A stretch of DNA of 36,612 nucleotides from Octopus bimaculoides (Eukaryota), in the NCBI RefSeq assembly GCF_001194135.2, contig NC_068993.1:10303026-10339637 (forward strand), read 5' to 3'. The notes under the pieces are model-generated. The model did not search any database. It was given only the letters and a program-made list of their open reading frames with translations, and was not told the DNA's origin. This document shows, one piece after another, positions 8,807 to 36,612 of the stretch. Each line of letters opens with the position of its first letter. The stretch's first letter is position 1. Position numbers and translations under genes: made by a program.

Positions 8807-11205
8807 GTACAATTTATTATTGAATTTCATTAATAAGTCTCATCACACTCTCCCCAACCATCATAAATAGACATGTTTTTTCCCCCATTTAATATCACGT
8901 TTTCCCAAAGCACATTTGGTTTGCTGGGTTAGTCATCTATTATTAATTAATTAACAAACATTAAATTCTAAAACTATTTCATATTTACTAATTTATACGT
9001 TATAAGATTATCTATCGTAAATCAATGCATTCTTTTAATAGTCACGTTACTGTGTTTTTTTTGTGTTCTTTTAATGATCTATATTTGATTTAATTTTCTG
9101 ACGTTTTTATCTAGTTAGTTAATAACTGAATAACCCATATGTTGGTAGTTGCTTATAAGATCCTCCAATAGTCGTAAACATAGCAATATAAGCTAGGACT
9201 AAAGTATATTTTAACGATGTAAAATCGTTTGTGTTATTTTTCAGTTTGTTTCTTCACAAGCATGTTTTTATGTGAAGGAAAAAAGTGTATAAAAAGGATA
9301 GTTACTCCGCTAAAATATATTTTAACCAAAATTGAGTTAAAGTTGGAATTTTGTTTCGATTTCTTGTTAATCAGTTTAAAATATAACAATATACTATCTG
9401 TCATCCAATTATCTAGTACACATAACATACATATTAAGTTCCCTTCCCCGTACGCACGTACAAAGTTGACAAATCAATGTATAAGTAAGTAGAGTCGAAA
9501 TGGTAATTCATACTCGTGTTGTTAGACTACCTTAGAATTGAAAAAAAAAATGGTTATTCTTTTTATGGAAGATATGAATGATTGGAGGGAAAAAAAGGAA
9601 ATTTATAAAAATCTTCGTAGTTTTTTTTTGTTTAGTTTTCTTTTTAAATCACATCTTTGATGTAAATACTTGAAGCTGACAACATAAGCATCTTTCCTTC
9701 GTGTTCCTTGACTGTTGTGTACTGTGCTTGGAGCCATCAAGTGAGAGACAAGGAACTGAATGAGGATCAGTGATGTCTGTGCACCTGGCCATTCCTGGTT
9801 AGGTGCAGCTGCCACATACCAAAGGTACTGCCTCTATTCAGGTAGTACCCTTACACTCCAACTGTACCATAATATTGTGACAACTAACAGCGCCAATCTT
9901 ACCAAATTTGGAGGGTATGTGAAGGCAGTGGACATTGCCTCATTCTTCAAGCTAGTGGTGGGGGAAAATTCAAAAACTGTTGAGGCTACTTTTTTCATGC
10001 TTTTATGTATGAGAAAAATAGATTTTAGTGAATTCCTTTCATTAAATAAGTAAATATACTGGCATCAACCAGCTGTGCCTCTCCTCAAATTTGTAGCTCT
10101 CTGCCAAAGTTAAAAATTGTTGTGTTATAAAGTTAAAGAATTGTCTCTTGTGAGAAAAACAAATGAGACATTCTGGATCTTTGTCTTCAGTTACATCATT
10201 CTCAGTTTGGTAGCCTTTGATTTATTCATCTGTGATGTGTGTGTTTTGTTTGTAAGTTTGAGGTATTGAAAAAATGGTGCAGGAGTGGCTGTGTGGTAAG
10301 TAGCTTGCTTACCAACTACATGGTTCTGGGTTCAGTTCCACTGCGTGGTACCTTGGGCAAGTGTCTTCTGCTATAGCCTCGGGTCGACCAAAGCCTTGTG
10401 AGTCAATCTGGTAGATGGAAACTGAAAGAAGCCTGTCGTATATATATGTATATGTTTGTGTGTTTGCCCCCCACCCCTAATCGCTTGACAACTGATGTTA
10501 GTGCGTCTACCTAGCAGTTCAGCAAAAAGAGACTGATAGAATAAGTACTAGGCTTACAAAGAATAAATTCTGGGGTTGATTTCATCATCATCATCGTTTA
10601 TCGTCCACTTTCCATGCTAGCATGGGTTGGACGATTTGACTGGGGACTGGTGAAACCGGATGGCAACACCAGCCTCCAATCTGATTTGGCAGAGTTTCTA
10701 CAGCTGGATGCCCTTCCTAACGCCAACCACTCCGAGAGTGTAGTGGGTGCTTTTACGTGTCACCTGCAACTAAAGGCAGTGCTCCAGCATGGCCACAGTC
10801 AAATGACTGAAACAAATAAAAGAGTAAAAGAGTGATGTATTCTCTAATATATCTAGTAAACATTTTTTTTTTTTTCAATTATTTCTTTCGATTTAGGTAC
10901 CTGTGAGAAAGGGGCAGTTGAAGTTTCTAATTGCTTCACCGTTCCACATAACGAATCAGAAGATGAAGTAAGTATAGATGTACATACATGTGTGTGTCTT
11001 TATTGTTATTTATCTTTTGCTACCAACCTGCCTGAGAGTGCCCTTGATTGGATGATACCAACTCCTTCTTTAAAGTGATCCAAAAACTTGCCTTAAAAAT
11101 TCCATATTAATTAATGTTTCAAACACTGGACAAAGTTATCTTACTAAATTCTTCATCATCATCATACATATGTTGTCCATGATGACATGGGTTGGACAGT
11201 TTGAA

Positions 11206-11236
<31 letters not shown>

Positions 11237-14200: not shown

Positions 14201-16886
14201 TTGCCCATGATAGATTTACTGTTAGGCCTCTCAACTCTAGGGCTTGCTTATATGTTTAGTAGTTCTTTAATTCTTTGATGGATTCAGCTACAAGAATGAT
14301 ATCCCATCACTATATGGGAGTTCTTACAAAAAGGCAATCTTAAGCTCCTCCGTTACGACCTGGAGAATAAGAAGGGGGTCTGAGAACTGATCTGTAGTGA
14401 ATGGGAAGTTTTCACTGATGGACATGCTGTTGGTGTGTCACCTTCCCAATGGAACTTTGCTCCATCTGCAGATAAGATTTGTATATTTTTAGTTACTTGT
14501 TATGTAGAAATATTTGGTTTGAGTAACAGAAATTGTTAAAGTGATCTAAATTAAGACCTTCCATCAAAATCTGATGTTAATTAATGTTCCAAACATCGAA
14601 TTAATAATGATAAAGTTATTTTTCTAAATTCTTCATTATCATCATTAATTGAAATAAAGGCAATGAACTTCAACAGAAATATGGTAATGAAAAGGGGTTA
14701 ACTTGTTTCAACCATTGAATGCAGATGTGATGGTCACTTGGGCATGGAGTTAATTTTAGTTGTTTTGTTTTTTTTCTTTTTGTTTTGGATTATTTTCATT
14801 TTAAATTGACAATATCTTTTCATGATTTTTCCTTCTGTTTCTTAATTATAGTCAACTTGATTCGGGAAAGCCAGCTTTCTTCTAAACGGTCCGTCTCTAT
14901 GGTAACTGATTTACAACAAGTAGACATACTTTGTGGACGACTGCAGAGCATGCTTGCAATTGTTCAGCAATATGTTGAAGATGTTCTGGTAAGTTGGTCC
15001 TGAACCCCTCTCTCTCTCCCTTTCTCTTTCTCTCTCAGCCACTGGACTGATCATACTGGGGCATCATCTTCAATGAAGGTATGAGACAAGTGGGAGTTGC
15101 CAAACTGGAATAAATTTCACCTACCCAAAGTGGTCAGTTTGCTAGTTCTGGATTTGTGTGTGTATATATATATTATTGAGTGTATATACTCAATTTGTCT
15201 TTTTCCTTCTCTGGAATCATGGCGAGATAGAACTTGGGGATGATTCCTTTTAATGTTGAGTGTTAAAACACCAGAAAGTACGTGAATTAAGCCTGGGACA
15301 AATCAAATCCCCAAGCAGTGTCTCACAGCAAATCCAACAAATAAACAAAAATACACACACTGAGTACATGTGATCAATAATGTTTACACCATTAGCACTG
15401 CTTTTAATTTGATGTTGAATTTAATCTTACAGGTGCATTGGTGTAACATGTCAGCAAATAGTTCTTATACTGTTTATATATAGTCATAGTAGAGCCTATT
15501 AAAAAAAAAAAAAAGTCTTAGGGTCTTATTTTTCAAGGTGGTGCCCCAGCATGGCTGCTGTCTAATAAATGAAACAACTGATGAACAAAAAAAAAAAAGG
15601 GGGAAAAAATGGCATTTTATTTTATTTTCTGTTATAATTCAGGATGGTAAAATTGCTCCAGATAACAGCACAGGACGCTTTCTGATGGAACTCATTCACA
15701 GTGTCCCTATGATTGATCCTGATGAATTTTCTGCAATGCTAAACGCCAACATAAAGGTGAGTATGTTTATGGTCTCTCTCTCTCTCTCTCAAAGTATGAG
15801 TGCAAGAGATGATGACTACATTGACTCCAGTGTTCAACTGGTAGTTATTTTGTCAACCCTTGAAAGGATGAAAGGTAAATTTTTACCTCAGCAGACTTTG
15901 AGCTCACTACATACATACATACATACATACATCATCATCATCGTTTAACGTCTGCTTTCCATGCTAGCATGGGTTGGACGATTTGACTGTGGACTGGTGA
16001 AACCAGATGGCTACAGCAGGCTCCAATCTGATTTGGCAGAGTTTCTACAGCTGGATGCTCTTCCTAATGCCAACCACTCTGAGAGTGTAAAGGGTGCTTT
16101 TTACGTGCCACCAGCACGAAGGCCAGTCAGGTGGTACTGGCAATGGCCACACTCGAAATGGTGTATTTTACGTGCCACCTGCACAGGAGCCAGTCCAGCA
16201 GCACTGGCACGATCTCGCTCGACTGTCTATACAAAGGTAAACTGTTGCTGCACTTTCTGTCTGCAGTGTGCTAACCATTCTAAGACACAATATTAATAAT
16301 GCCACTCTTTGACTCTTTTAATAAAGATGACCATCCATTTATTGATGACTTAATGTAATTGTTTTGTATGGGAGTAGGCTGGTCTTTTTCTGTTGCTAAT
16401 TAGTTTCAAGTGGAGACCTTTTCTCAAACAACCAACTGGCCCCAAGGCTTTAGGAAACGTCAGATTACTGTTTCAAATATAATGCTTATTTATTAACATT
16501 GTTTCGAATTAATCAGGCATCATCTCATTGCTTAGGGATTTCAATGATATGATTGACTGTTTTTAGAATGGCATTGCAGGTTAGGTGTGAGACGCCAGAT
16601 CCAGCTAGTCAAAAAATAAAAAGAATATTTGGGCTGGATATGGCCAGTTTAAATGCCAAAAGCTTAAATATAATTAAGTATTCAGTGGTTTAGTCTTAAG
16701 TTAATGGTTCAGAAATTTAATTTAGAGTTTGGTTAATTTTCAGTGTTATTTGTGAATTGATTTTTATTCTTTATTTCTTCTTTGCAGGATCTTCTGATGG
16801 TTACTTACCTCTCCAACTTAACTCGTGCCCAACTGGCCCTGAACGAAAGGCTCACTATGTTTATAGCTATGGGTGCTAAAGAGTAG
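8701..16886 (+). CDS. eIF3f: Eukaryotic translation initiation factor 3 subunit F (MPN domain), complete gene, 8 coding exons, 278 aa
   Basis: join(8701..8806,10897..10967,11799..11878,12569..12706,13516..13607,14852..14988,15643..15756,16788..16886) = 837 nt. All introns are GT-AG with consistent phases. Protein [87 protein letters not shown]...[22 protein letters not shown] matches eIF3f as recalled. Confidence 0.97.
10276..10832 (+). mobile_element. SINE family A interrupted by a family B copy (about 10582-10767)
   Basis: Family A body splits between GGGGTTGATTT and CAACTAAAGGC, with a (CAT)n-led family B copy in between. Confidence 0.85.
10897..10967 (+). CDS. eIF3f: eIF3f exon 2
   Basis: tttag acceptor; [24 protein letters not shown]; donor gtaagt. 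Confidence 0.95.
11799..11878 (+). CDS. eIF3f: eIF3f exon 3
   Basis: ttcag acceptor; [26 protein letters not shown](W); donor gtaagt. Confidence 0.95.
12569..12706 (+). CDS. eIF3f: eIF3f exon 4
   Basis: [45 protein letters not shown]; AG and gtaagt flanks. Confidence 0.95.
13516..13607 (+). CDS. eIF3f: eIF3f exon 5
   Basis: ttccag acceptor; [30 protein letters not shown]; donor gtaagt. Confidence 0.93.
13631..13685 (+). repeat. 27-bp direct duplication CTGTTATATGCACTCATAATTTAC
   Basis: Two adjacent copies just after eIF3f exon 5. Confidence 0.8.
13690..13790 (+). mobile_element. Short RTE-like C-terminal relic
   Basis: [22 protein letters not shown] resembles the RTE terminal motif EVV..DL..L....M..DR..W. 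Confidence 0.4.
14480..14701 (+). mobile_element. piggyBac-type MITE family 2 (also about 1245-1410 and 11010-11160)
   Basis: Shared core AATAATGACAAAGTTATTTTACTAAATTCTTCATTAT in three copies. End AAGGGG-TTAA at 14692-14701 and start TAACCCTTTTGATA near 1245. Confidence 0.6.
14852..14988 (+). CDS. eIF3f: eIF3f exon 6
   Basis: [45 protein letters not shown]; donor gtaagt. Confidence 0.93.
15643..15756 (+). CDS. eIF3f: eIF3f exon 7
   Basis: [38 protein letters not shown]; donor gtgagt. Confidence 0.95.
15932..16215 (-). mobile_element. SINE/LINE-tail family B with (CAT)n tail
   Basis: CATCATCGTTTAACGTC...GGATGCCCTTCCTAACGCCAACC core. Other copies about 1555-1650, 12166-12330, 12825-12990, 13270-13415, 13900-14070, 17740-18058, 22615-22699, 25020-25380, 27060-27200, 27640-28070. 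Confidence 0.85.
16788..16886 (+). CDS. eIF3f: eIF3f exon 8 (terminal)
   Basis: tttgcag acceptor; [32 protein letters not shown] then TAG. Confidence 0.93.
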   Translation, partial: DLLMVTYLSNLTRAQLALNERLTMFIAMGAKE

Positions 16887-21938: not shown

Positions 21939-22709
21939 AGACAAGGCATACATAATGGTCATTACATATTTTTCTTTATTGTATTAGATTTAACTTTGCC
22001 TTGTTTTGCATATCACTCTGTGTAAAAACCAGTGTAACTGGAGCACAATGATGGATTTACAATATAGAATGGTGATGAACTATAACCCCGGACCCTGCCA
22101 CAAGAATATGTGGAGTTCTTTACTAACCTGAACAATATTGATAGTCTGGTGTACTAACAGAAAGCTTATAAAGTATTGATAATCCATCACTAATCTCTCT
22201 CTCTCTCTTTTCAATTTCCTTTTAATATATGCAGAAAAAGAATGTTACTTGAAAACCGGAGGGAAACCTGGCCCTAATTTCAAAAGGAGTTTTTATGTGT
22301 GTAGTGTACGCGAGTCTCGTTGTGACTTTGTTCAACCTGTGAGGTAAGTCATCAGAATTACTTAAAAATCTTATATTTCATTATCTTTTTTTGTTTGTCA
22401 GTCTTTGTGGCATTAAGGTACTGGTTTAGTTTAGTCTGTCATAATTCCAGTTCCTTTGTGGTAAAATGGAATCCCTCTCAATATTGCTGTGAATTTTTTT
22501 CTGTCTCTGTGTGTCTGCCTGTCTTACTGCTGTATTATAAGATCTATTTATTTGTTGTGTCGTCCTAATAGCATATGTACAATATCTCTTTTATATATAT
22601 ATATATATATATAATCTGCCAAATCAGATTGGAGCCTGGTGTGCCCATCCGGTTCACCAGTCCTCAGTCAAATCGTCCAACCCATGCTAGCATGGAAAGN
22701 NNNNNNNNN

Positions 22710-22750
<41 letters not shown>

Positions 22751-25700
22751 CTAACAAATACCAATAATAATATTGCTAATAATTATATAAATAGAAGTGG
22801 AAATAACAGTGACAATAGAAATTATGAGGATAACAATAATATGCTTAGTCCTGCCAACCATAATTTTAACCAACAAATAGAATGCAGCAGTATTGATGTT
22901 GAGGGTTTAACTGAAGTTGATGATAGGCTCAACTCCAATGAAAATAATAGGAATCAGGGACCTAGTTCATATAATATCAATATGCCTAATGCTGGAAGAA
23001 TAATTCTAACTGATAGCGCATCAGGAAACTGGTTAAATAATGATGGAAATGATCAAAATATACCTAATAGTAGAATTGAGGAAGGGATAAATAATATTAG
23101 TGTAAATAATTGTAACAATAATAATAGAGATATTAGAAATAATATAGGTGGGGTTGATAGCTCCACTAGGTGCACCTGCAGAAATAAGTCCCATTGTCCG
23201 TTATTAGGAAGTTGTTGCACTCGTAACGTAGTGTACAAATGCATTATAAGTACGATAACCGAAAATTATATTCACATAGGATGTAGCATTAATGTGAAAC
23301 AGAGAATATATAACCATAGGTCTTCTTTTAGACTAAGACATAAGGCAAATAGTACGACATTAGCAAGTAAACTTTGGGAGTTGAAAGATAATGGTATTAA
23401 TTTTAGCCTTAAATGGGAAATTATAAGAAAAGCTCAACCTTATAGAAATAGTAGATATGGATGTGAATTATGTTCTATGAAAATNNNNNNNNNNAACCTT
23501 ATAGAAATAGTAGATATGGATGTGAATTATGTTCTATGAAAATATATGAAATTTTTAAACTTAGAAATAATCCCAATCTAATCAATAATAGATTAGACCT
23601 TAGGGTATTGTGTGTACACTGCTCGACTCGCACTTTTAAATTTTTTAAAAAGTAGTTAAAATTATCAAAATATAGTATTTCAACTTCTACCATGTTCATC
23701 TGGGGCTATTAATTAGCACATATTTTAAATTGGAAATTGAACCTTTATAACATATATTTCTGATCTCTCACCTTAACATATAATCTTCTTGTGATAACTA
23801 AGATTTCAACTTTATTCCATGAAAGATATTTTTTCACACCACTTCTGCTAATGCTGTTAGTTCTTAATATGTATCTTAACCCTATGTAGCTTATAAGAAT
23901 AGGAAGTTTCGTAAGTTCTAAATGTTTTTAATTAGTTCCCCTAATTTAAATTTTATTTATTGTATTTAATGCTTGACTCTAAAAGGATCATTATTATTAT
24001 TACATTTTTTCAGGGCTTGTAGTGGTAGTGTCTTGTTTATTCTATATTTTGACTTAAATAAATCTAATCCTTATGCCTAAAATAAATCTAATCCTTATGC
24101 CTAAAATAAATCTAAACCTTGGGTTTATTAAGGTTTAAGGGACAAAAAAAAGAAAACGAATAGTAGGAATTAACAAGGACATCCAATATAGAAACATGAT
24201 AATTGATTACTAGTTTAATTAGTCATGAACTTGTTTTAAGACTAACATGGGCTAATTAAAGAATATTAATTGAATTATAAAAATAAAGCTTACCTTTTAT
24301 GTGTCTTCAAAATAGTATTATTATATATATCAGCTTAAATTTTAAAATCATTTTAAAAATAATTCAAAATAGTTTTCCTGAGCCCAATATATATAATATT
24401 CTTAAACTTTACACCTTATCTATAGCCTTTGAATTCAAAATTGACATTACTTTGGGATTTTTTATTATTAAAATATTATTTAAACTAATATTGATATCTG
24501 TAAAACAATACTGATGCTTTATTCAGACTAAAGAAAAAGCTCTGTTGACCTAAATGCTTAAGGTTTAATTCCTCAACATTATGATAGCAGTAGAAAAACC
24601 CCAACCTAAAATAGTGTTGCCACTCTGACCAGAGAAACCTTTATAACCATATCCATGTATAATGCTTACACCTTCCCTTTCCTTAGAAGTGATTGCCCCT
24701 TATACTATAACTACTAGATAAGAGACAATAAAATCAGAGACAGTTAGAATTCTGCCTAGAACTAATTACTAGCCTGATAGCCTTGGCTATGTCAAGATGG
24801 ATTTTTATGTATTCTTCTTCCCACTTGGATTTTAAATGTTGCCACAATTATAATGTCTATTCTACTGTAATTTTCTACATTTTTGTGCAGCTGAAGATTG
24901 CTCTACATATTGCATTTAATGTAATGCTCACATTACTTAAATAAATGGAGTAGCATGAAACGTGCGTACTGCAATCATCTTTAAAATCCGTGTTGCTTAT
25001 TTTGATTATATATATATATATATTGGACGGTTTGACCGGGCTGGCACACTGGAAGGCTGCACCAGACTCCAGTCTGATATGGCATGGTTTTCTATGGCTG
25101 GATGCCCTTCCTGATGCCAACCACTCCAAGAGTTTAATGGGTGCTTTTACATTCCACCGGCACAGATACCATTTGCATGACACTAGGGTGTGTTTATGTG
25201 CCACCAGCACGGGTGCCAATTTGCATGACACTGGTAACTGCCATGACTACAATTTTTTGCTCAGCTTGATGGGTCTTCTTCTCATGCACAACATAATGCC
25301 AAAGGTCTTGGTCATTGCCTAAGTGAGGCCCAACACTTGAAAGGAACTCAACCACTTTGCCTCCATGAGGCCCAACACTCAAAGCAGCTCTACTGTAATA
25401 ACATATACTAATGTATATGGTTTGTGTATTTTCTGGTGGCTGCAATGGCATAGCAGAGTATATCATTCTTGAGCTAATCATCATCACCATTATCATTCAG
25501 TCAGTCAAGACTGAGATAGAACTAAACATAATCATCATCATTCAATCAGGATTGAGAATCACCACCAATCATCAACCATCATCATCATTCAATCAAGTAT
25601 TATCAACTGTCATCATCAACCATCAGTCATCAATCAGCATGCATCAATCATCAATCACCGTTCGTCAATCACCACTCATCAGTCACCATTCGTCAATCAC

Positions 25701-26527: not shown

Positions 26528-29500
26528 CTCTTTTACTCTTTTACTTGTTTTAGTCATTTGACTGCGGCCATGCTGGAGCACCGCCTTTAGTCGAGCAAAT
26601 CGACCCCAGAACTTATTCTTTGTAAGCCTAGTACTTCTATCGGTCACTTTTGCCGAACCGCTAAGTTTCGGGGACGTAAACACACCAGCATCGGTTGTCA
26701 AGCGATGTTGGGGGGACAAACACAGACACACAAACACACATATATATACATATGCATATATACGACTGGCTTTTTTCAGTTTCCATCTACCAAATCCATT
26801 CACAAGGCTTTGGTTGGCCCAAGGCTATAGTAGAAGACACTTGCCCAAGGTGCCACGCAGTGGGACTAAACCCGGAACCATGTGGCTGGTAAGCAAGCTA
26901 CTTACCACACAGCCACTCCTGCGCCATATATAATAATGCATTTACATTATTTTCTTATATTGGTTTCTTTCTCACAGGTGTTACTACCGATGTAATCAAA
27001 AAAAGGAAGGAACAGACTGGTGCGGTTTTAGGATGAGAAAAGCTCTGAAGGTAACTTCAATTTATCATCATCGTCATTTAATGTTTGTGTTCCATACTGG
27101 CACGAGCTGGATGGTCCAAGAGGATCCAACTAGCCCAGGGTCTGTGTTGGTCTTCAGTGTCTGCTTTGGTAAGGTTTCTACAGCTGAATGCCCTTCCTAA
27201 TGTTACCAACAAGGCATTCATGACAAATAACAAATGAATGCTTTTATGGAGACCTGCCGAAAGTTAGCAAGATCAAGCAAAGATGGCTGTAACTACCTGG
27301 TCACTGCATGTGTTACCCTAAACTGGAAGCAGCCAAATTAGTCTTGTGGAACCCACTTACATCAACAACTTGATTGCAGACACTGGCCTGGAATGTATCC
27401 AGGACCTAGAGGCAGTGACGATGGACCGAGAAGTGTGGCAGGTAGACTTTGTTGCTGTGACCCAAGTTGGAACCTGGTAACAATAATGCTATCCGGGTGT
27501 TTTTTTTTTGTGCCACCAGCACAAGCAAAGTAACTGTGCAGCTTGCATGACTATGAAACCCAAGGAGGGGCAGAGCAGGTTCTTGTTGTAGAGGAGTTCA
27601 ATGGCTGTTTACATTTAGAAAAGTGTGTGAGGGGTCATCGTCATCATTTGTTTTCCATGCTAAGATGGATCAGATGGTTTGGCTGGGGTTGGCAAACTGG
27701 AGAGCTGCACTGGGCTTTGGTCTGATATGTCTTGGTTTGTACAGCTGGATGCCCTTTTTAACACCAACCATTTCATAGTGTGTAGTGGGTGGCATTCACG
27801 TCACTGGCACTGGTGCCTTTCACGTCCCTGGCACAGGTGCCTTTTATGTGTCACCAGCACTGGTCACAACTATGCTTTCACTTAGCTTGATGTGTCTTCT
27901 CAAGCATAGCAGCAACTCGCCAAAGGTCTCTGTCACTTGTCATCACTCCCATGAGACGCAACATCCAAAGATCATACTTCCCCATCTTGCCCCACACCTT
28001 CCTGAGTCTGCCTCAGATCAACACTTCTTTACGCAGCTCTCCTCCTCAAATAAAGGTGATGAGGTATCCAGGCAGTTACCTCAAAATTTATACTATGCTT
28101 ATGAAGTTAACCCTTTAGCATTCAGATTATTCTATCAAATGTAATACTTATTCCCTCACGTTGTTTTCAATTAATCATCCATTATCTCATAGCTTCGAGA
28201 TTCCAATGATGTATTTGATTAAGTTTTGAACGACATTGCTAGGTAGGTGTGACAGGCCAGATCTGGCCTGTTTGAACATAACACAGGAAGAAAATTTAGG
28301 GCTGGATATGACCAATTTAAATGCTGAAGGGTTAAATTGATAGACTACTGATGAAATAGTTGTAAGGTCACTGACTTTAGACTTGGCCCACTTCTTAATG
28401 GCTGTTTTTAAATCCTTGATTACCTTTTACAGTGTTCTTTGAGAGTGGAAACTGAGCATTAATTAGGGATCTTATTCTTCCAGGAAAATGAGAAACCCAT
28501 CAAGAGTAATAAACAAGCAAACCCATCATCCAAGGTAAGGATTGTTTATTAAATGAGCATCTTTTATATTTAACTTGTTTCAGTCATTTGACTGCGGCCA
28601 TGCTGGGGCACTGCCTAGAAGGTTTTTTAGTCGAACAAATTGACCCCGGGACTTGTTTTTTAAGCTTAGTACTTATTCTGTTGGTTTCTTTTGCCAAACT
28701 GATTGTAAACTCACTAGCACTGGTTGTCAAGTGGTGGTGGTGGTAGGGGACAAACGCACACATGCATGCACACACACACACACACACACGTAACACATAC
28801 ACAAAGACACAAACATAGATATATGCATATATATATATACGTACATACATGTCACTGAAGTGAACAAGGGCACTAATCAGCACCAGTATTGCTGGAAATA
28901 AGAGTCAAAACAACTCAGTAGCCACAAAAGGCACTCTCTTAATGAGCTGACATATGGCCAGTTTGAATATATAATAAGTTGAATATTTGGGCCAGATATG
29001 GCCTGTTTGAATATATTTGGGCCAGATGTAGCCAGTTTGAATATATAACAGGTAGAATATTTTGGGCCAGTTTTGAACCTGATGTGGTCAGATTGACTGT
29101 TAAAAGGTTAAACTGCAAAATATTATGTTTATGTATACAATGAGAATTACACTCAGAAAATACTTTTTTTTTGTTTTTGGTTAATTATTGCTAGCATGAA
29201 ATTACGAAGGAATTGGCTAAAGGTGAAAAGAAAGAGCTGCCATCATTTTCATCATTGAGTAAGTCTGAGCACAAAGCGCCGTTGTTTGGAAAAGAAGACA
29301 AGTTGGAAGACAATAAACCTGTGAAGGATGGTAATGATAGCTTCACGCAATGGAGGGACAGTCCAGTCAAAGATACTTCAAGGCAGAAGGAGAAAGCCAG
29401 TCTTACATCTGCTCTTCAAAAACAAAAGGTTTGTGATAAATTTAGTGGAGATCTTTTAGATGATGATGATGATGGTTGTTGTTGTTATTATTTTATTGTT

Positions 29501-32500
29501 GTTTACTTTTAATATGTATGTTTGTTACAATCACTTGCTGAGACACACCAAGTGTCCTAGGGTGGGTGAAGGATAAGAGATGTTACAGTGTGTCTGAAAA
29601 CTTGGGGAGGGCAAGTGGCAGGGGTAGTAGTGAAATATCTTCATGTAATTCAACACATACATTTAAATTGATAAGGTTTTTTTTAAGGATGCGGGCTGTA
29701 CTTGTCAGCACAATCTTTTGAATTTCTCTGAATACATGAGATAGTGCTGAAAGGTTCCTGGTTTTAGGGGTATCACGAAATGCCTGGCTGGAGGCTCAAT
29801 CTTCCAAGTTCTTATACAAGGCTTAGAAAAACTGAAGGACTGCTGCAATAAGTGTGTGTATCTGAGAGGGGAATATGTTGGATTAAAAACATCATTAACT
29901 GATCCTCCTGTATTTTCTTTTACCCAAAGCCAGGAACTTTTCAGCACCTCCTCACGTGCTGTAGAATGGTTTCTTGACATTGCGTGATAGTTGTAAATGA
30001 GTATAATTGTTATACAACCAGTGTCCTTCATGTCCAGTTTTCTGTGAGAACATATCTGATTATATGGAAATGTCTTGCTTGGAAACAGGTGAGGGTTGGT
30101 AACAGGTGGGCAGCCAGCCATTGAAACTCCACTTAAACAAATTTTATCCAACCTATTTGAGTCTAAAAAAAAATGGACATTAAAAAAACTAAAAAAACAA
30201 TAAATATTAATGAAAATAAACAATGAAATACTGTATACTCATAGGTGAGAGGTATGTATAGCTAATTTCTCTGATTGTTTGTAATACAGGAGCTGTTATC
30301 TCGTGTGCAGTTGTCAGCACTCCCTGACAAAGGTGCTCGTCTCAAAGAAAATATTCAACAATTGGAAAGTAAGATCCAAAATATAGATCTAAATAAAGAT
30401 GTTTCCAGAACTTCTAAGAGTAAGTTTTACTTTCAAATACTCTCCTACCTTATCACACTTGGATCACCATTTGTTTTATATTTTTGTTACTTGTTTGGAA
30501 CAAATTTTTCATGCTTAGTTTTCTATCTACACCCAAGGGAGGGGGTGGTTTGAGGCAAGTCTTCTTGCACTGTTACAGGCTAGCTGAGTATTATAGAGAG
30601 TGGTGTGAAGCAACTAGAGTATTATGGTCCATCATATTGGTGTACTGAATCAAATAGTGTTATGCTTTATATTACAGTGTGGAAGGGTACACTGAATCAA
30701 ACAGATAAGTTTTATAAGGAGGATTAAAGTAAATACAGCATTATAGTGTAAGGGGAGTATAGTGGTCTGATTGAGCAAACATAAAAGCATCTCAACCGTG
30801 ACTGTCCTGTTCTATTTTTAACATAGTAGGGTGCAATTTGGCTGAATGACCTTATAGAGAAGCTTTTGTTGCTTGGACTGGTATATATGTCCATAAAGCA
30901 ATGAATAAGGTATGCAAGCATATCTTTCCATAAAATGAAATAAAATAAATTAAAACATTAAACTTTTTTTTTTTTCATTTTATTTTATTTCTAAGTGATT
31001 TCCTCTTTCTTCCCCTCAGCACATACTGAACCTGAAATCATCAGAGTCCATCCACCAAATGAACCAGGAGGTCAACCCATACACAAAACAGTGAATAAGC
31101 CAAGTATGTATGAGATTAGTTTTACTTCATTTATGAGTGACCTGTTACATATTACAAGTTTAGAAATGAGCACAAGAGACAAACTAAGCCAAATGAATAT
31201 GAGTGCCTGGCACAATGGTTAGGGTATCGAGCTCCCAACTCAAAGCCTGTAAATTCAAGTCCTGCTGTACTGTTATAAATAATTTTTGCTGTCATCAATC
31301 TTAATGTAATTGCACTGTGTTCCTGCTTTAGTGGGAATTGCTTTAATGTATTCTCAACCAGATTCCTGTTAAAGCAGTCATAAACAAGAAATATAGAAAA
31401 AGATGATAAAATACTAAAATTAGATGACTGATCACATTGTAGTTTTGTAGTCAAGTGTGTTTATGACTCATTGTTAATAGTGTCCCCTCATAGCTGTTGT
31501 TTATTTTTGTTTTTAATTGGGGAAAAAAAGATTTATTTTTCTGTAATGAAATGAGTGTGTGATAAACCTAGCACTTTGTAAACAAGCAAAGCCTAGACTC
31601 TTTAGAGTTGACGAAATTATTAATGATGTTTACTCTTCAGACAAAGAGTTTATCCTCATGTAGACAATGAGAATGATTCTGATAATCAAACTGGTGAAAG
31701 TGATGAAGAAAGTAGTGATGCAGGTGAACAAATTATGATAGTTGAGAGACAGACTTCTTATTTTTATGAATTTTTTTTTTTCAATTCTATCTATTAGTTT
31801 GCTTGCAATGAACAAATATGGTAGTTGAGAGAAAGGTCTGTTATTGCTATTCACCTGAATATTTCTGTGGTTCTATCTATTAGTCTTCCTATCAAATATG
31901 GTAGTAAAGAGAAAGGTCTGTTATTATTACTCTCCTGAATTTTTTTGCAATTCTGTCCATTGAAAAAATGTTGTAATTGTGAGAGAGGCTTATTATTGTT
32001 AATCTGAATTTTTTTGTGATTCTGCAATCGTTACTCTTGAGCTGTGTATGCAACTATTTTTTAGCATGGGAGTCCAGGTGGAGGGTAAAGTTAGATGCCG
32101 GGTCCTAGGCCTGTGAGGGTTAAGCATAGTTCACTCATCCTCCTCGCAGCAAAAGCTTTCCATTTTGTCTTAATTTCTTTTTCTTCCCCTCAGCACATAG
32201 TGAACCCGAAATCATCAGAGTCCATCCACCAAATGAACCAGGAGGTGAACCCGTACACAAAACAGTAAAAAAGCCAAGTATGTATGAGATTAGTTTTACT
32301 TCATTTATGAGTGACCGGTTACATATTGCAAGTTTTGAAATGAGCACAAGAGACAGTCTAAGCCAAATGAATATGGGTGCCTGGCACAATGGTTAGGGTA
32401 TTGAACTGCCAAATCAAAGCATGTAAGTTCAAGTCCTACTGTACTGTTATAAATAATGTTTGCTGTCATCAGCCTTAACACTGTTGCATCATGTCTCTGG

Positions 32501-35500
32501 CGTAGCAAGAGTAGTCTAAATGTAATCTCTACTGGATCCCTGTTAATGTGGTGAAGAATATGAAATGTAGAAAAAGAAGATAAAACTATATGGCTGCAAA
32601 GTAAGCTTGTTAACAACCACACAGCCATGATTGTAACATCTTGGCTGGAGAGACTCCCTGATCTCCAAGCTATGCACCTTCTTCCAACACAGGAATATCC
32701 ATAAGTAATTACTGAATGAAAAGACAGAAAAAAAAAATAATGAAGAGAAAGAAAACTATTAGAATTTTTGTCCAATTTTTTTTTCTCTAGTTTTATTTCG
32801 CAGTCATGGCTATATGGTAAGAAGTTTGCTTCCCAGCCTTATAGTTCTGGGTTCAGTCTCACTGCATGGCCTCTTGGTCCTCGGGCCCACTAAATCCTTT
32901 TAAGCGTAGGTGAAAACTGACAGACGCCTGTCATGTGTATATATATATATGTGTGTTCCTGTGTATGTGTGTGTTTGTCTTCCACTACCACTTGACAACC
33001 ACATGGTTCCAGGTTCAGTCCCACTGCATGGCACCATGGGCAGGTGTCTTCTACTATAGCCTCGGGCCGACCAAAGCCTTCTAAGTGGATTTAGTAGGCG
33101 GAAACTGAAAGTAGCTATTCAATATACATACATACATACATATATATGTGTGTGTGTATATCTATGTATGTATACATATGTATGTATGTATACATATGTA
33201 TGTATGTATATGTGTACGTATGTATGTACGTACATATATATATATGTATGTATGTATGTATATCTCTGTGTGTCTTTGTGTTTGTCCTCTCATCACCGCT
33301 TGACAACCGGTGTTGGCGTGTTTATGTACCCATAACTTAGTGGTTCAATAAAAGAGACCAGTAGAATAAGTACTCCGCTTAAAAAAGAAATATAAAGCGA
33401 GTCCTGGGGTCGAATTATTTGGCTAAAACCCTTCAAGGCCGTGCTCCAGCATGACCACAGTCAGATGACGGAAACAAGTAAAAGATAAAAGGTAAAACTA
33501 GTTTTTAAACATCAAATGGCTATGGGGATCCGCCAGAGTGAAGCAGTAATCAAAGGAGCCCATGGTTAAAAAATGGTTGGGAGTCACTGATTTACATTAT
33601 TTGAGAATTTCATTTCTTTCTCCAGGCCAGCAAGGATCATCGAGTGTAAAGAATGAAGTTGATAGTGATGATGATGAACCATCGTCAGCTTCTGATTACT
33701 CTGAAAAGTTACAAATACATAAACATCACAATCCTCAAAATTTAAGACAAGTCAAACTCACTGAAGCTTTTGCTTTACCAAAAGAATTTCTTGAAGGAAG
33801 TTATTCACGTAAGTTTATCATTTGTTTCTACAGCTAAAGTTTGTTGTAACGGATTTTGGTTCAGTTTTAATTTATTAGTCTTGTTTAAAACTGAACCAAA
33901 ATCCATTACAAGCTATGACCCCAACAAACTTTTTCCCCAATGTCTAGTAAATTCTAAGCTGAAGTGGTGACAGCATGGACTTTGTCTGTCTTCTTACTCT
34001 ATCAGAGTATTTAAGTAAAATTATAATATGTCCTACTGATTAAAAACTTCTATTTATTTATTTATGCAGCTGAGGATAGGCCTGCATTTAAATTGATGTA
34101 ATGATTGCATTGTTCAATTAAATGGAGCCGCTTGAAATGCTGGTACTGCATCACCTCTTGATATCCTGTTGCTTATTTTGATTTTATTCACCCTATTTTG
34201 AGTTGTACTAATAATACCTCACTAATTTTTGGTGCTTCAACTTAATCTCAATTATTTTATATATATATATAATTATTAATTTAATATGTATATATTTGTG
34301 TGTGTGTGTGTCCCTCACCACCACTTGACAACTGGTGTTTATTTATGTTCCTAATTTAATGGTTTTGGTAAAAGAGACTGATGGAATATGTACCAGGCTT
34401 CAAAAAATATGCACAGGGGTCGATTCGTTTGGCTAAAAGCTCTTCAGGGTAGTGCTCCAGCATGGCCACAATCCACTGACAGAAACAAGTGAAAAATAAA
34501 AGAAAAGATAAAGCTTTTATGCCCACTCTTTGAATGCACTTTCTTTTGGAATCATTAACCGAATAAAGGTTATCAAATCCTTGTCTTTTCAGAAGCCGGT
34601 TGGCAGCCTGCAACACTGTATGGAGGTCGAATGACCGTAACACGTCTCGAAGAAGTGAGGAACGCAATGGATAAAATTACTAACTCTTTGCATGAGTAAG
34701 CTCTTATTCTTGGAACTGAATTTCTTAAGATCTCAATTAGAGGCAGATTTAAAAATTCCAGTTTGGTGTGGTGACTGTGTTGGTGTGGTAGTATAGTAGT
34801 TATACAGGAATTATTTTAAACATGTTTTTGTGTCTCTCTGTGAAAGTGCATAGCCCAGTGGTTAGGGTGTTGCACTTATAGTTGTCAGATTGTGAGTTCA
34901 GTTCCCAGACTGGGTGGTGTGTTATTTTTCTTGAGTAAAACACTTCATTTCATGTTGCCTCCAGTGCAGTATGTATTGTAAAGAGGCAGCCTAAAAGAAG
35001 TAGAGGTAAGATTTACACTCCGACCTTGCAAAACCCTCATCAGCAATGATTATCCATACAGACCCATGGGTTGGAGGGCTGTCGCCCAAATGGTGCAGGT
35101 GTCATCTGCCAAGGAGTTGGGAATGACCAACAAATGATGGATGCAGCGACGTAATGTTGCATCACATGCACCATTACTACTGCTGCCGTAATGTCTTAGA
35201 CCTAATAGATGGGCTTAAATTCAACACAGCAAATTCACAAAACACTTGATATTTGTACTGTGTTCCTGCTATTAATGAGTTTAATATGTGAAATTGTTAT
35301 ATCATCATCACCATGATCATTGTCATCGTCGTCATCATTGTGGGTTTTATAATCATTCATTTTGCATAAATGTTTTTTTTTTCCATTCTTGCTTAGGTTG
35401 ATTGGTTATGAAGAAAGTTAACCTCTGAAAGACTGACTTCCTATTCATATATGCTGTAGATGTCTACCATTCTTATGAGCTATCATAAAATGGTGACAAT

Positions 35501-36010
35501 ACATGCTTAGACACACACATGCACATGCATACACCAAATAATGGTTTCATATTTTGGTACAAGGCCAGCAATTTCGGAGGAGTGGGGTAAGCAAATTATA
35601 TTGCCACCCCAATGTCCAACTGGTACTTCTTTTATCAACCCTGAAAGGACAGAAAGCAAAGTCGATTTTGGTGAAATTTGAACTCATAAAGTAAAGGCAG
35701 ATGAAGCACTGCTAAGCATTTTGCCTGGCAGTCTAATGATTCTAACAGCTCGCCACCTTATATACTAAATAATACAAATACATAATCTCTCTCTCTCTGA
35801 CATAAGTATTGATATTTTACAGAGGGGAATCTCAGATTAATATTGATTCTTGTCTATCTTTGATCATCAGGCAACTCAAAACTTGTCCAAAAGAAGATGA
35901 AGAAGAGGAAGATCCTCGAGGTTTGAAGGTCTCTTTGATGCCTCATCAGAAACATGCTTTAGCCTGGTTACTCTGGAGGCAGAAACAGAACCCTTCCGGT
36001 GGTATTTTAG
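20381..36010 (+). CDS. TTF2: Transcription termination factor 2 / lodestar (SNF2-family helicase with N-terminal GRF-type zinc finger), 5' partial; continues beyond window
   Basis: join(20381..20408,22235..22343,26003..26083,26978..27050,28484..28534,29195..29428,30290..30419,31020..31103 and/or 32194..32277,33626..33808,34593..34695,35871..36010). All GT-AG, phases consistent, no stops. Motifs: [32 protein letters not shown]; ALPDKGARL; LYGGRMT; [19 protein letters not shown]...GGIL immediately before the expected ADDMGLGKT. Confidence 0.93.
21524..21659. repeat. 54-bp inverted repeat, 28-nt loop, 52/54 identity
   Basis: Arms 21524-21577 and 21606-21659 aligned by hand. Confidence 0.95.
22235..22343 (+). 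CDS. TTF2: TTF2 exon 2 (GRF-type zinc finger)
   Basis: [35 protein letters not shown]; gcag acceptor, gtaagt donor. Confidence 0.92.
22700..22709. other. Assembly gap (10 N, true size unknown)
   Basis: N run between a truncated family B copy and (TA)n. Confidence 1.
22841..23655 (+). CDS. GIY-YIG endonuclease ORF of Penelope-like element (251 aa after removing the gap-induced duplication; frame is also open upstream of the ATG)
   Basis: ORF track entries 22841..23539 and 23470..23655 join into one 756-nt frame once the N-gap and the duplicated 49 nt are collapsed. Confidence 0.75.
23485..23494. other. Assembly gap flanked by an identical 49-nt overlap
   Basis: 23436-23484 equals 23495-23543. 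Confidence 0.95.
24056..24115 (+). repeat. 24-bp tandem repeat AAATAAATCTAATCCTTATGCCTA, about 2.5 copies
   Basis: Read directly from sequence, inside the Penelope-like 3' region. Confidence 0.8.
24886..24973 (+). ncRNA. Type I hammerhead ribozyme fold (HHR-1)
   Basis: TGCAG CTGAAGA [59-nt stem II] GAAAC GTGC GTA CTGCA: 5-bp stem I, CUGANGA and GAAA core, GUA cleavage triplet at 24966-24968. Confidence 0.8.
25470..25925 (+). repeat. Degenerate ATC-rich minisatellite with recurring TCATTCAATCAAGACTGAG...GAACTAAATATC unit
   Basis: Unit visible about 5-6 times among (ATC)n tracts. Confidence 0.7.
26003..26083 (+). CDS. TTF2: TTF2 exon 3
   Basis: tttccag acceptor; [26 protein letters not shown]; donor gtaaga. 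Confidence 0.88.
26528..26925 (-). mobile_element. SINE family A (tRNA-derived), full length
   Basis: Minus head GGCGCAGGAGTGGCTGTGTGGTAAG with B-box-like GGTTTAGTCCC, internal microsatellite, GTAAAAGA tail. Other copies about 6112-6932 (-), 10276-10832, 11235-11450, 21770-21865, 28570-28760 (-), 32800-33495, 34310-34510, 36250-36605 (-). Confidence 0.9.
26978..27050 (+). CDS. TTF2: TTF2 exon 4
   Basis: cacag acceptor; [24 protein letters not shown]; donor gtaact. Confidence 0.88.
27210..27480 (+). mobile_element. RTE-clade LINE 3' end relic
   Basis: [20 protein letters not shown]...AAKLVLWNP, frameshift, [29 protein letters not shown], typical of RTE RT C-termini. Confidence 0.75.
28111..28331 (+). 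mobile_element. piggyBac-type MITE family 1, full length, TTAA TSD
   Basis: TTAA CCCTTTAGCATT ... AATGCTGAAGGG TTAA (11/12 TIR match). Related fragments near 12720-12790, 16450-16668 and 28940-29110. Confidence 0.78.
28484..28534 (+). CDS. TTF2: TTF2 exon 5
   Basis: ttccag acceptor; [17 protein letters not shown]; donor gtaagg; phase 0-0, low-conservation linker. Confidence 0.75.
29195..29428 (+). CDS. TTF2: TTF2 exon 6
   Basis: 78 open codons [13 protein letters not shown]...SALQKQK; ctag acceptor, gtttgt donor. Confidence 0.8.
29737..29954 (+). mobile_element. Mariner-derived MITE, second copy in opposite orientation
   Basis: Same TIRs (GTGCTGAAAGGTTCCTGG...CCAGGAACTTTTCAGCAC) and internal [10 protein letters not shown]. 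Confidence 0.82.
30290..30419 (+). CDS. TTF2: TTF2 exon 7
   Basis: [34 protein letters not shown]; conserved LPDKG motif; donor gtaagt. Confidence 0.9.
31020..31103 (+). CDS. TTF2: TTF2 exon 8a (first copy of duplicated 84-nt exon)
   Basis: cttcccctcag acceptor; [27 protein letters not shown]; gtatgt donor; phase 1-1. Confidence 0.75.
31590..32123 (+). mobile_element. Probable piggyBac relic: acidic N-terminal-like peptide, degenerate 60-75-nt tandem repeats, AGGG-TTAA end
   Basis: [20 protein letters not shown] then, after a frameshift, [21 protein letters not shown]. Repeats at about 31730-32030. AGGGTTAA at 32116-32123. No matching 5' TTAACCCT found. Confidence 0.4.
32194..32277 (+). CDS. 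TTF2: TTF2 exon 8b (second copy of duplicated 84-nt exon)
   Basis: cttcccctcag acceptor; [27 protein letters not shown]; gtatgt donor; phase 1-1. Confidence 0.75.
33626..33808 (+). CDS. TTF2: TTF2 exon 9
   Basis: tctccag acceptor; [20 protein letters not shown]...EFLEGSYS; donor gtaagt; phase 1-1. Confidence 0.85.
34064..34151 (+). ncRNA. Type I hammerhead ribozyme fold (HHR-2), homologous to HHR-1
   Basis: ATGCAG CTGAGGA [57-nt stem II] GAAAT GCTG GTA CTGCAT: 6-bp stem I, intact core, GUA at 34143-34145; shares downstream GTTGCTTATTTTGATT with HHR-1. Confidence 0.72.
34593..34695 (+). CDS. TTF2: TTF2 exon 10
   Basis: [33 protein letters not shown]; LYGGRMT motif; donor gtaagc. Confidence 0.9.
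35871..36010 (+). CDS. TTF2: TTF2 exon 11 (start of SNF2 ATPase domain)
   Basis: [46 protein letters not shown]; donor gtaaga. Confidence 0.95.
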
Positions 36011-36612
36011 GTAAGAAAATCATGTTTGATTTTGGGTTTATTTTGCTTATGTGTCCTGTTGGGGTGCTGGTATGCCTAAATGGTTAAGTAGTTTGCAATC
36101 ATGAGGTCTGTGGTTTGATTCTTTTTCACAGAAGATGAAATTTTTCATGAAGCTGTTTTTGTAACCATGTGGTTTTATGCGCAGTAATACCTTGGGAAAG
36201 TTCCATTGTAACCTAGCTGACCAATGCCTTGTGAGTGAATTGGGGAAAAGAAACTGTGTTGACTGCAACCATACTGGAGCACCGCTTTTAATCAAACAAA
36301 TCGACCCCCAGGACTTATTTTTTGTAAGCCTAGTACTTATTCTATCGGTCTCATATGCTGAACCACTAAGTTACGGGGATACATAAACACACCCGCATCA
36401 GTTGTCAAGTGACGGTGGGGAACAAACATAGACACACAAGCATATACGACAAGCTTCTTTCGGTTTCCGCCTACCAAATCCTCTCACAAGGCTTTGGTTG
36501 GCCTGAGGCTATAGCAGAAGACACTTGCCCAAGGTGTGTTGCAGTGGGACTGAACCTGGAACCATGTGGTTGGGAAGCAAGCTTCTTACCACACAGCTAT
36601 GCCTGCACCTAT

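What the first reader, a model, noticed from the sequence alone, without database searches (positions are those of the whole stretch)
31020..32277. Tandemly duplicated frame-symmetric TTF2 exon with both copies intact
Seen: two 84-nt phase 1-1 exons 1174 nt apart with identical splice flanks (cttcccctcag / gtatgtatgag). They differ at 6 sites: 4 replacements (T>S, Q>E, I>V, N>K) and 2 silent. The duplicated downstream intron diverges more with distance. Established: tandem exon duplication is a main route to mutually exclusive splicing, but symmetric exons can also be included together or skipped. Inference: a lineage-specific isoform switch or repeat expansion in the linker ahead of the helicase.
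Basis: partly seen in the sequence, partly recalled or inferred. Interest (0 to 1): 0.7.

Follow-up and report, generated by a model that had tools for sequence, protein, structure and literature searches.

The report
Young local exon duplication, usage unproven
An 84-base exon-like unit and about 300 bases of its downstream intron have been copied 1.2 kb away inside a TTF2/lodestar-type helicase gene; the copy is real, but this is a common kind of event and nothing in the sequence shows that both copies are used or that they act as a regulated switch.

Summary
Two 84-nt, phase 1-1, open units lie at 31020-31103 and 32194-32277, with identical AG/GT signals and 6 differences (4 replacement, 2 silent). 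They sit in a 412-nt ungapped duplicated block (31000-31411 and 32174-32585, E 1e-136).

It is not a head-to-tail tandem. Only 20 nt upstream of the exon is shared, and 762 nt of unrelated sequence separates the blocks. Divergence is a step, not a gradient: 7.4% up to about 31298, then 33% (0 of 2000 permutations). That points to gene conversion or re-copying.

The block carries a tRNA-like, SINE-like element and ends at that element's A-rich tail.

I found no sign of selection. The exon is as diverged as the intron (p=0.82), and pN/pS is 0.58 (p=0.61). A neutral copy would stay "intact" 57% of the time.

All four splice combinations are in frame, the intervening intron is 1090 nt, and both copies are GT-AG. 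So steric, U2/U12 and NMD exclusivity are ruled out, and a docking/selector candidate is not significant.

An assembly artefact is unlikely, since the nearest N gap is more than 7 kb away and the two-age pattern does not fit alleles. No orthologue or transcript data were reachable.

Verdict: an ordinary young exon duplication whose function is untested. Interest is low.

The parts
31000..31411 (+). Duplicated block, copy 1: 20 nt of acceptor region, the 84-nt exon, and 308 nt of downstream intron
   Evidence: Ungapped 412-nt alignment to 32174-32585, 85.4% identity, E 1.5e-136
31020..31103 (+). Exon-like unit 8a, 84 nt, phase 1-1; encodes (T)[27 protein letters not shown]
   Evidence: Open only in this frame; cag| acceptor and |gtatgt donor; GC 43% against 34% in the introns
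32174..32585 (+). Duplicated block, copy 2
32194..32277 (+). Exon-like unit 8b, 84 nt, phase 1-1; encodes (T)[27 protein letters not shown]
   Evidence: 6 differences from 8a
31201..31273 (+). tRNA-like head of a SINE-like element inside copy 1 (degraded)
   Evidence: Rfam RF00005 16.8 bits, below the gathering score of 29; homologous position to the copy-2 hit
32375..32447 (+). tRNA-like head of the SINE-like element inside copy 2. It has A-box-like TGGCACAATGG and B-box-like AGTTCAAGTCC, and an A-rich tail follows that ends where the homology ends (about 32575-32585)
   Evidence: Rfam RF00005 27.4 bits, E 0.004, just under the gathering score of 29; ARAGORN finds no tRNA
31298..31411 (+). 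Old, low-identity part of the block (67% identical to 32472-32585)
   Evidence: Change-point analysis and gapped realignment: JC distance 0.44 against 0.078 for 31000-31297
31412..32173 (+). Non-duplicated spacer. It forms most of the 1090-nt intron between the two units and contains a degenerate tandem repeat of about 80-84 nt at 31725-32024
   Evidence: No similarity to intron 7, to the sequence after copy 2, or to anything else in the window
30290..30419 (+). Upstream exon ('exon 7'), ends in phase 1
   Evidence: Open frame with acag|GAG acceptor and AGA|gtaagt donor
33626..33808 (+). Downstream exon ('exon 9'), starts in phase 1
   Evidence: Open frame with ccag|GCC acceptor and CAC|gtaagt donor
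35825..36010 (+). Helicase-proximal exon encoding ...[30 protein letters not shown]
   Evidence: 11 homologous ORFs, 56-81% identity, all ending at the same intron position; SNF2-rel_dom exons follow them on L002 and L006
32640..32685 (+). Marginal candidate docking site. It can pair with the homologous sites 31194-31244 and 32368-32413, one downstream of each unit
   Evidence: Duplex -30.8 / -35.5 kcal/mol. 30-nt windows give -23.6 / -27.0 against a null minimum of -23.6 +/- 2.1; 19/40 and 2/40 shuffles reach the observed values. Not significant

Best explanation
This is a genuine, evolutionarily young, local same-strand duplication. The copied piece is about 412 nt: the last 20 nt of an acceptor region, an 84-nt frame-symmetric exon, and about 308 nt of downstream intron that already contained a tRNA-derived SINE-like element. 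It lies in the part of a TTF2/lodestar-type SNF2 gene that codes for the low-complexity linker before the helicase.

Shown: the copies are separated by 762 nt of unrelated sequence, so the event was an insertional or template-switch type copy rather than a clean head-to-tail tandem. The block has two ages, 7.4% and 33% divergence.

Inferred: an older duplication had its exon-proximal 300 nt re-homogenised by gene conversion, or that part was re-copied later.

Inferred: both units carry identical core splice signals and nearly identical exon bodies, are separated by a normal 1090-nt intron, and keep the frame in every combination. The spliceosome should therefore treat them as two equivalent cassette exons. 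That would give transcripts with both units (a 28-aa tandem repeat in a disordered linker) and/or with one. No mechanism enforces 'one and only one'.

Shown: there is no sequence evidence that selection has acted on either copy since the duplication.
For: Block extent, identity and uniqueness. No homology outside the block. Two-age structure: (0 of 2000 permutations), and it is not an alignment artefact (gapped alignment). SINE-like content, with the block's 3' end at the A-rich tail. Faint continuation of homology past the tail, 13/16 at P=0.047, and a shared putative SINE target-site duplication at P=0.058; both favour one SINE insertion predating the duplication.

Exon-likeness: GC 43-44% against about 34% in the introns, and splice sites comparable to neighbouring exons. 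All four isoforms are open. No selection signal: exon 6/84 against intron 17/202 mismatches, p=0.82; pN/pS 0.58, p=0.61; 57% of neutral simulations stay intact. No assembly gap within 7 kb. Tandemly duplicated exons occur in about 10% of animal genes (Letunic et al. 2002, as cited in PMC9013439).
Against: There is no transcript evidence of any kind, so neither unit is proven to be an exon. Exon 7 can splice directly to exon 9 in frame. The branch point of 8b is not part of the duplication, because only 20 nt upstream is shared, so 8b may be recognised less well than 8a. No orthologous locus could be examined, so age and polarity are unknown. The gene-conversion inference rests on a single pair of sequences. 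Strong selection on 31000-31297 could in principle produce the same step.
Confidence: 0.5

Rival explanations
1. Only one unit is a functional exon. The other is a silent pseudo-exon: a recent intronic copy that has not yet decayed or is poorly recognised.
For: At this divergence a neutral copy keeps its ORF and AG/GT 57% of the time. Exon and intron are equally diverged, and pN/pS is not distinguishable from 1. Only 20 nt upstream of the exon is duplicated, so the two units have different branch-point contexts.
Against: The polypyrimidine tract, acceptor, donor and the first 43 nt of intron are identical, and the exon bodies are 93% identical, so there is no obvious reason for differential recognition.
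Confidence: 0.25
2. This is a nascent pair of mutually exclusive exons. The duplicated intronic segment downstream of each unit acts as a selector, and the two selectors compete for a single docking site downstream of 8b (about 32640-32685). This is the model in which duplicating one arm of an intronic stem creates competing structures.
For: The layout fits: equal length, equal phase, and a duplicated downstream intron. The best intronic pairing partner of both copies is the same site, 32651-32685, and it pairs at homologous positions 31199 and 32373. The evolutionary model and the existence of downstream docking sites are described in PMC6071210.
Against: The pairing energies are not beyond chance: 2/40 shuffles reach the observed value for copy 2 and 19/40 for copy 1. 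The 'selector' is the GC-richer tRNA-like SINE head, which pairs well with many sequences. Steric hindrance (1090-nt intron), U2/U12 incompatibility (both GT-AG and identical) and NMD (84 = 3 x 28, all isoforms open) are all excluded (criteria from PMC6071210). The four amino-acid differences are conservative changes in a low-complexity linker.
Confidence: 0.1
3. Neither unit is a real exon. The 412-nt block is a repeated or transposed element, or an intronic sequence that happens to be open and flanked by AG/GT, and exon 7 splices directly to exon 9.
For: Exon 7 to 9 is in frame. Half of the block is SINE-like. The open frame runs on past the donor in both copies, 30995-31222 and 32130-32396. 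No homologue of the 28-aa peptide was found anywhere.
Against: The exon-proximal 200 nt has no other copy in the 36.6-kb window even with nhmmer, although other repeat families occur 8 or more times there. The unit has a strong polypyrimidine tract with cag|, a gtatgt donor, the correct phase, and higher GC than the introns. Non-conservation is expected for a disordered linker, and exons 6, 7 and 9 also found nothing.
Confidence: 0.1
4. This is an assembly artefact: two alleles or haplotigs of one exon placed in series.
For: The assembly has gaps elsewhere in the window: 2127-2517, 3444-3838, 22700-22709 and 23485-23494.
Against: There is no gap within 7 kb. The duplicated piece is only 412 nt and is embedded in unique sequence on both sides. 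The copies differ by 7% in one part and 33% in the other, a pattern not expected between alleles. 762 nt of unrelated sequence lies between them.
Confidence: 0.05

Closest known systems
Tandem exon duplications in animal genes (Letunic, Copley & Bork 2002; re-surveyed in PMC9013439)
   Same: Two homologous exon-sized units of identical length and phase, in the same orientation, sit next to each other in one gene with their splice sites retained. The duplication extends into adjacent intron.
   Different: The copies are not head-to-tail. Only 20 nt upstream and about 310 nt downstream are shared, and a 762-nt unrelated spacer separates them. Expression of either copy is unknown.
Mutually exclusive exon clusters controlled by docking and selector RNA pairing (Dscam exon 4/6/9 clusters, 14-3-3zeta, Mhc, ATE1; PMC6071210, PMC7797038)
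   Same: The exons are homologous and of equal length. The duplicated intronic sequence downstream of each could in principle serve as a selector, with one shared partner site downstream of the cluster.
   Different: The pairing is not statistically supported here, and no conservation data exist. Exon length is a multiple of three, so double inclusion or double skipping is not penalised. The known examples are ancient and under clear constraint, whereas this pair shows no constraint signal.
Internal protein repeats created by exon duplication in disordered regions (recalled from general knowledge, not tested here)
   Same: A symmetric 28-codon exon in a low-complexity, charged and proline-rich linker would yield a 28-aa tandem repeat if both copies are included.
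   Different: There are only two units, and no further, older copies exist in the window. Co-inclusion is unproven.
Retroelement-associated exon copying (L1 or SVA transduction, exon shuffling; recalled from memory)
   Same: The block's 3' boundary coincides with the A-rich tail of a SINE-like element, and the copy sits at a non-adjacent site.
   Different: No significant target-site duplication flanks either block (P=0.17 and 0.30). Faint homology continues past the tail. The two-age structure does not fit a single retrocopy event.

Membership tests
Tandem exon duplication | Two homologous exon-sized sequences in the same gene, same strand, adjacent | tested here: met
   31020-31103 and 32194-32277, 92.9% identical, with no exon candidate in the correct phase between them
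Tandem exon duplication | Same length and same intron phases, splice sites retained | tested here: met
   84/84 nt, phase 1-1, identical cag| and |gtatgt
Tandem exon duplication | Head-to-tail arrangement of the duplicated unit | tested here: not met
   The 412-nt blocks are separated by 762 nt that has no homologue on either side
Tandem exon duplication | Both copies present in mature transcripts | not testable with these tools
   No transcript data. The protein collection holds no spliced product of this gene
Mutually exclusive exons | Exclusivity by steric hindrance (intervening intron too short) | tested here: not met
   The intron between the units is 1090 nt (31104-32193)
Mutually exclusive exons | Exclusivity by U2/U12 spliceosome incompatibility | tested here: not met
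   Both units have the same GT-AG signals and identical flanks
Mutually exclusive exons | Exclusivity by frameshift and NMD when both or neither unit is included | tested here: not met
   84 = 3 x 28; all four isoforms have zero stops
Mutually exclusive exons | Competing docking and selector RNA structures | tested here: inconclusive
   One shared candidate site at 32640-32685, but its energies fall within the shuffle distribution (2/40 and 19/40)
Mutually exclusive exons | Transcripts carry exactly one of the two units | not testable with these tools
   No RNA data
TTF2 / lodestar subfamily of SNF2 ATPases | SNF2 helicase domain following the HQK.ALAW..WRE....GGIL motif | tested here: inconclusive
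   The window ends 600 nt after the motif exon. Homologous ORFs on L002 and L006 are followed by PF00176 SNF2-rel_dom exons. The profile's only PDB hit is RAD5 at E 0.36. No database hit carries a name. The subfamily assignment rests on the recalled human TTF2 / fly lodestar motif
TTF2 / lodestar subfamily of SNF2 ATPases | N-terminal GRF-type zinc finger (as in vertebrate TTF2; recalled) | tested here: inconclusive
   A regex scan of all six frames found no Cys-rich GRF motif in the window. It may be split by an intron or lie outside the window
tRNA-derived SINE | tRNA-like head with Pol III A and B boxes | tested here: inconclusive
   27.4 and 16.8 bits against a gathering score of 29. The box-like motifs were seen by eye. 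ARAGORN finds nothing
tRNA-derived SINE | Many dispersed copies in the genome | tested here: inconclusive
   No other full copy in the 36.6-kb window; only faint head-like hits at 34845-34906 and 2038-1980. The genome is not available
tRNA-derived SINE | Flanking target-site duplication | tested here: inconclusive
   ATATGGGTGC / ATATGGCTGC, 9/10, around the copy-2 element, P=0.058; nothing for copy 1, P=0.87
Haplotype or assembly false duplication | Near-identical copies next to a gap or contig join, with divergence at allelic level | tested here: not met
   The nearest N run is at 23485-23494. Divergence is 7.4% and 33% in two parts, with a unique spacer between the copies

The most novel reading that the evidence does not exclude
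The pair is a newborn mutually exclusive exon cluster caught soon after its origin. Duplicating the exon together with one arm of an intronic stem (here the head of a tRNA-derived SINE) created two selectors competing for one docking site at about 32640-32685. That would be a natural example of the duplication-creates-competing-structures model, with a transposable element supplying the selector.
Probability: 0.06. Interest if true: 0.55.

Novelty: new member of a known kind. Interest (0 to 1): 0.2.

Why it matters
If both units are spliced in, the protein gains a 28-residue repeat in a disordered linker. That is a small change, of a kind seen in about a tenth of animal genes, with no obvious functional consequence. 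The locus would become interesting only if transcript data showed strict either/or use. It would then be a very young mutually exclusive pair whose enforcing mechanism could be dissected, possibly with a SINE-derived selector. As it stands, the main value is as a curation note: gene models here should be checked for one, two or no copies of this exon. It is also a clean small example of a two-age duplication, probably from gene conversion.

Tried and rejected
(1) Orthologue and transcript comparison. A spliced 234-aa linker query found nothing. The exhaustive representatives search refuses spliced queries. The helicase-proximal ORF found only distant raw-ORF homologues from host DNA in metagenomes, and none of their contigs carries a recognisable homologue of exons 6-9. 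A fully degenerate DNA pattern for [13 protein letters not shown] found nothing in the metagenome contigs. I ran no further search on the 8a ORF. Exons 6, 7 and 9 had already found nothing, so no close relative is in that collection.

(2) Retrocopy origin. The apparent GCAAA..AGCTT direct repeat flanking copy 2 is not significant (P=0.17 against shuffles, 0.30 empirical), and there is none for copy 1. Rejected.

(3) I thought a dispersed-repeat fragment abutted the 3' end of copy 2. blastn-short shows only 12-nt matches. Rejected.

(4) Larger diverged tandem unit. There is no homology between 30700-30999 and 31874-32173 (score 12 against 12.9). Between 31412-32173 and 32586-33347 there is only a weak local signal, explained by a short extension past the tail.

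(5) Further, older copies of the 28-aa unit. tblastn and nhmmer found none.

(6) Whole-region duplexfold as a docking test was uninformative, so I replaced it with a windowed scan and a null.

(7) An AG/GT-bounded acidic open stretch in the spacer (31641-31723) is in the wrong phase to be an exon between 8a and 8b.

(8) PDB and Pfam could not name the gene from the single helicase-proximal exon.

(9) The miRNA-family hits at 33122-33263 are microsatellite artefacts.
Full report
**What is there**

Two 84-nt units lie at 31020-31103 and 32194-32277 on the + strand, 1174 nt apart. They share the acceptor ttcttcccctcag| and a donor |gtatgtatgag. The donor continues as 43 identical intronic bases.

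The units differ at six positions. Four change the amino acid (T>S, Q>E, I>V, N>K) and two are silent (CCT/CCC, GTG/GTA). Only one frame is open, and it is phase 1-1.

After correcting neighbouring exon boundaries by a base or two, the partial gene model is:
- 29195-29428
- 30290-30419
- 8a
- 8b
- 33626-33808
- 35825-36010

With 8a+8b, 8a only, 8b only, or neither, the spliced product has no stop codon.

**Extent and shape of the duplication**

A gapped self-comparison gives a single 412-nt ungapped alignment: 31000-31411 against 32174-32585, 85.4% identical, E 1.5e-136. blastn, tblastn and nhmmer find no third copy of the block or of the peptide anywhere in the 36.6-kb window.

Only 20 nt upstream of the exon is shared. 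A T-rich 16-nt extension across a 10-nt indel is possible. At the other end, 13/16 matches past an 8-nt indel suggest about 19 nt more (P=0.047).

The 762 nt between the blocks (31412-32173) resembles neither the sequence before copy 1 nor the sequence after copy 2. It has no other copy in the window and contains a degenerate internal repeat of about 80-84 nt. So this is a local, same-orientation duplication, but not a clean head-to-tail tandem.

**Two ages**

Mismatch counts by segment are:
- acceptor flank: 2/20
- exon: 6/84
- proximal intron: 5/97
- tRNA-like segment: 8/73
- next 32 nt: 4/32
- last 106 nt: 35/106

A likelihood change point falls at about 31298, with 22/298 mismatches before it and 38/114 after it. 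The JC distances are 0.078 and 0.44. None of 2000 permutations reaches the observed value. A gapped realignment introduces no gaps in the tail, so misalignment is not the cause.

A single copying event cannot give this pattern. I considered three readings.
- An old duplication whose exon-proximal 300 nt was later homogenised by gene conversion.
- Two old related SINE copies, one of which primed a later one-sided copy of the exon and its flank.
- Strong selection on 31000-31297.

The third would need 195 nt of intron, including a SINE head, to be as constrained as the exon, which is unlikely. This part is inference.

**SINE-like content**

Rfam's tRNA model hits 32375-32447 at 27.4 bits (E 0.004 in a 1.5-kb search, gathering score 29). 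It hits the homologous 31201-31273 at 16.8 bits. ARAGORN calls no tRNA.

The segment has A-box-like and B-box-like motifs and is followed about 130 nt later by an A-rich tail, which ends exactly where the block homology ends. This looks like a tRNA-derived SINE of about 210 nt that was already in the intron when the block was copied.

Membership in a SINE family is unproven. The score is below threshold, there are no other copies in the window, and the target-site duplication is marginal.

I tested a retrocopy origin by looking for target-site duplications around the whole block. The repeat I saw by eye is not significant (P=0.17 and 0.30).

**Is either copy under selection, and does "both intact" mean anything?**

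The exon (6/84) is no better conserved than the high-identity intron (17/202; Fisher p=0.82). pN/pS is 0.58, with 4 changes at 62.8 non-synonymous sites and 2 at 18.2 synonymous sites (p=0.61).

In 20,000 simulations at the observed 8% divergence, a neutral copy keeps an open frame 81% of the time. It keeps the open frame plus AG and GT 57% of the time. Intactness therefore says almost nothing about function.

On the other side, both units look like exons. GC is 43-44% against about 34% in the flanking introns. The polypyrimidine tracts are strong, the donor is comparable to those of neighbouring exons, and the phase is correct.

**Mutually exclusive splicing?**

PMC6071210 lists four known ways of enforcing exclusivity. 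They fare as follows here.
- An intron too short to splice: no, it is 1090 nt.
- Mixed U2/U12 sites: no, the GT-AG signals are identical.
- Frameshift plus NMD: not applicable, since 84 is a multiple of three and all isoforms are open.
- Competing docking and selector RNA structures: tested below.

A windowed duplex scan of all flanking intronic sequence against the duplicated intron segments did pick the same partner for both copies. That site, 32651-32685, pairs at homologous positions 31199 and 32373, which is the layout expected for a downstream docking site. But the energies (-23.6 and -27.0 kcal/mol) are reached by 19/40 and 2/40 composition-preserving shuffles. The "selector" is also the GC-richer tRNA-like head.

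I count this as not supported, but I keep it as the most novel reading that is not excluded.

**Artefact?**

The only N runs are at 2127-2517, 3444-3838, 22700-22709 and 23485-23494, all more than 7 kb away. A 412-nt block embedded in unique sequence, with 7% and 33% divergence in two parts, does not look like collapsed or expanded haplotypes. Read depth could not be checked.

**Gene identity and comparative evidence**

The last exon in the window encodes ...[33 protein letters not shown]. Its ORF finds 11 unnamed raw-ORF homologues (56-81% identity) on Logan, ENA and JGI contigs, apparently host DNA in metagenomes such as termite gut. All of them end GGILGK, which is read-through of the same phase-1 intron. 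On L002 and L006 the following ORFs hit Pfam SNF2-rel_dom.

A profile of these sequences finds only RAD5 in the PDB, at E 0.36. So [quoted passage not shown] is supported. The specific label TTF2/lodestar matches the motif as I recall it, but no tool result names the gene.

The linker exons, including the 28-aa unit, have no detectable homologue in any fetched contig, in the protein collection, or in the metagenome contigs. For that reason "lineage-specific" and the polarity of the duplication remain untested.

**Comparison with what is known, and verdict**

About 10% of animal genes are reported to contain tandemly duplicated exons, and many unannotated copies exist (PMC9013439). This locus is another instance. 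Its mildly unusual features are the non-adjacent copies, the 3' boundary at a SINE tail, and the clear two-age pattern.

It fails three of the four mechanistic criteria for mutually exclusive exons and is inconclusive on the fourth, so I do not file it as an MXE pair.

My best estimates are:
- real young duplication whose two units are both spliceable cassette exons, with no enforced exclusivity: 0.5
- one unit is a silent pseudo-exon: 0.25
- nascent MXE: 0.1
- not an exon at all: 0.1
- assembly artefact: 0.05

Interest is low (0.2). Junction-level transcript data would settle the question quickly.

Noticed in passing
window 14785-15003 and 15538-15948 (+): Two open stretches hit Pfam PF13012 MitMem_reg (E 0.003 and 3.5e-8). 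This is the C-terminal region of MPN-family proteins (eIF3f / COPS6 / PSMD7 type), so a second gene lies upstream of the SNF2 gene on the same strand.
   Followed up: partly
window 22841-23539 (+): A 232-aa ORF with an Asn-rich N-terminal half and a Cys-rich C-terminal half, bracketed by 10-N gaps at 22700-22709 and 23485-23494. It has no Pfam hit. It may be a transposable-element protein.
   Followed up: partly
window 32800-33491, with copies at 26530-26923, 36286-36606, 10286-10459, 6106-6333, 6782-6919, 11205-11442, 28561-28850 and 34258-34502: A dispersed repeat family, in both orientations and often next to (TATG/TGTG)n microsatellites, occurs at least 8 times in the window and fills most of the intron after copy 2.
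   Followed up: partly
window 31725-32024: A degenerate tandem repeat of about 80-84 nt (3-4 units, 70-81% identical) lies in the spacer between the two copies. The repeat finder and blastn see it, but TRF does not.
   Followed up: partly
window 31641-31723 (+): An open acidic stretch, [27 protein letters not shown], is bounded by ttcag| and |gtgaac in the spacer. Its composition resembles the real downstream linker exon, but it is in the wrong phase to follow 8a, so including it would shift the frame.
   Followed up: partly
window 33122-33263: A palindromic (TATG/TACA)n microsatellite gives many sub-threshold hits to miRNA families (mir-297, mir-466 and others). These are low-complexity artefacts.
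   Followed up: yes
window 35818-35825: A NAGNAG-type acceptor (acagag|GG) precedes the helicase-proximal exon. Only the distal AG keeps the frame with the upstream exon as modelled. In the nearest long homologous contig, L001, the open homology starts later, at RQLDTCP.
   Followed up: no
P0001-P0011; L002, L006: All 11 homologous ORFs of the helicase-proximal exon, from very different samples, end in GGILGK. The phase-1 intron after GGIL is therefore conserved across distant animals.
   Followed up: partly
window 34845-34906 (+) and 2038-1980 (-): There are faint nhmmer matches (E 0.002-0.02) to the tRNA-like head of the element inside the duplicated block. They are probably heads of other tRNA-derived repeats.
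   Followed up: no
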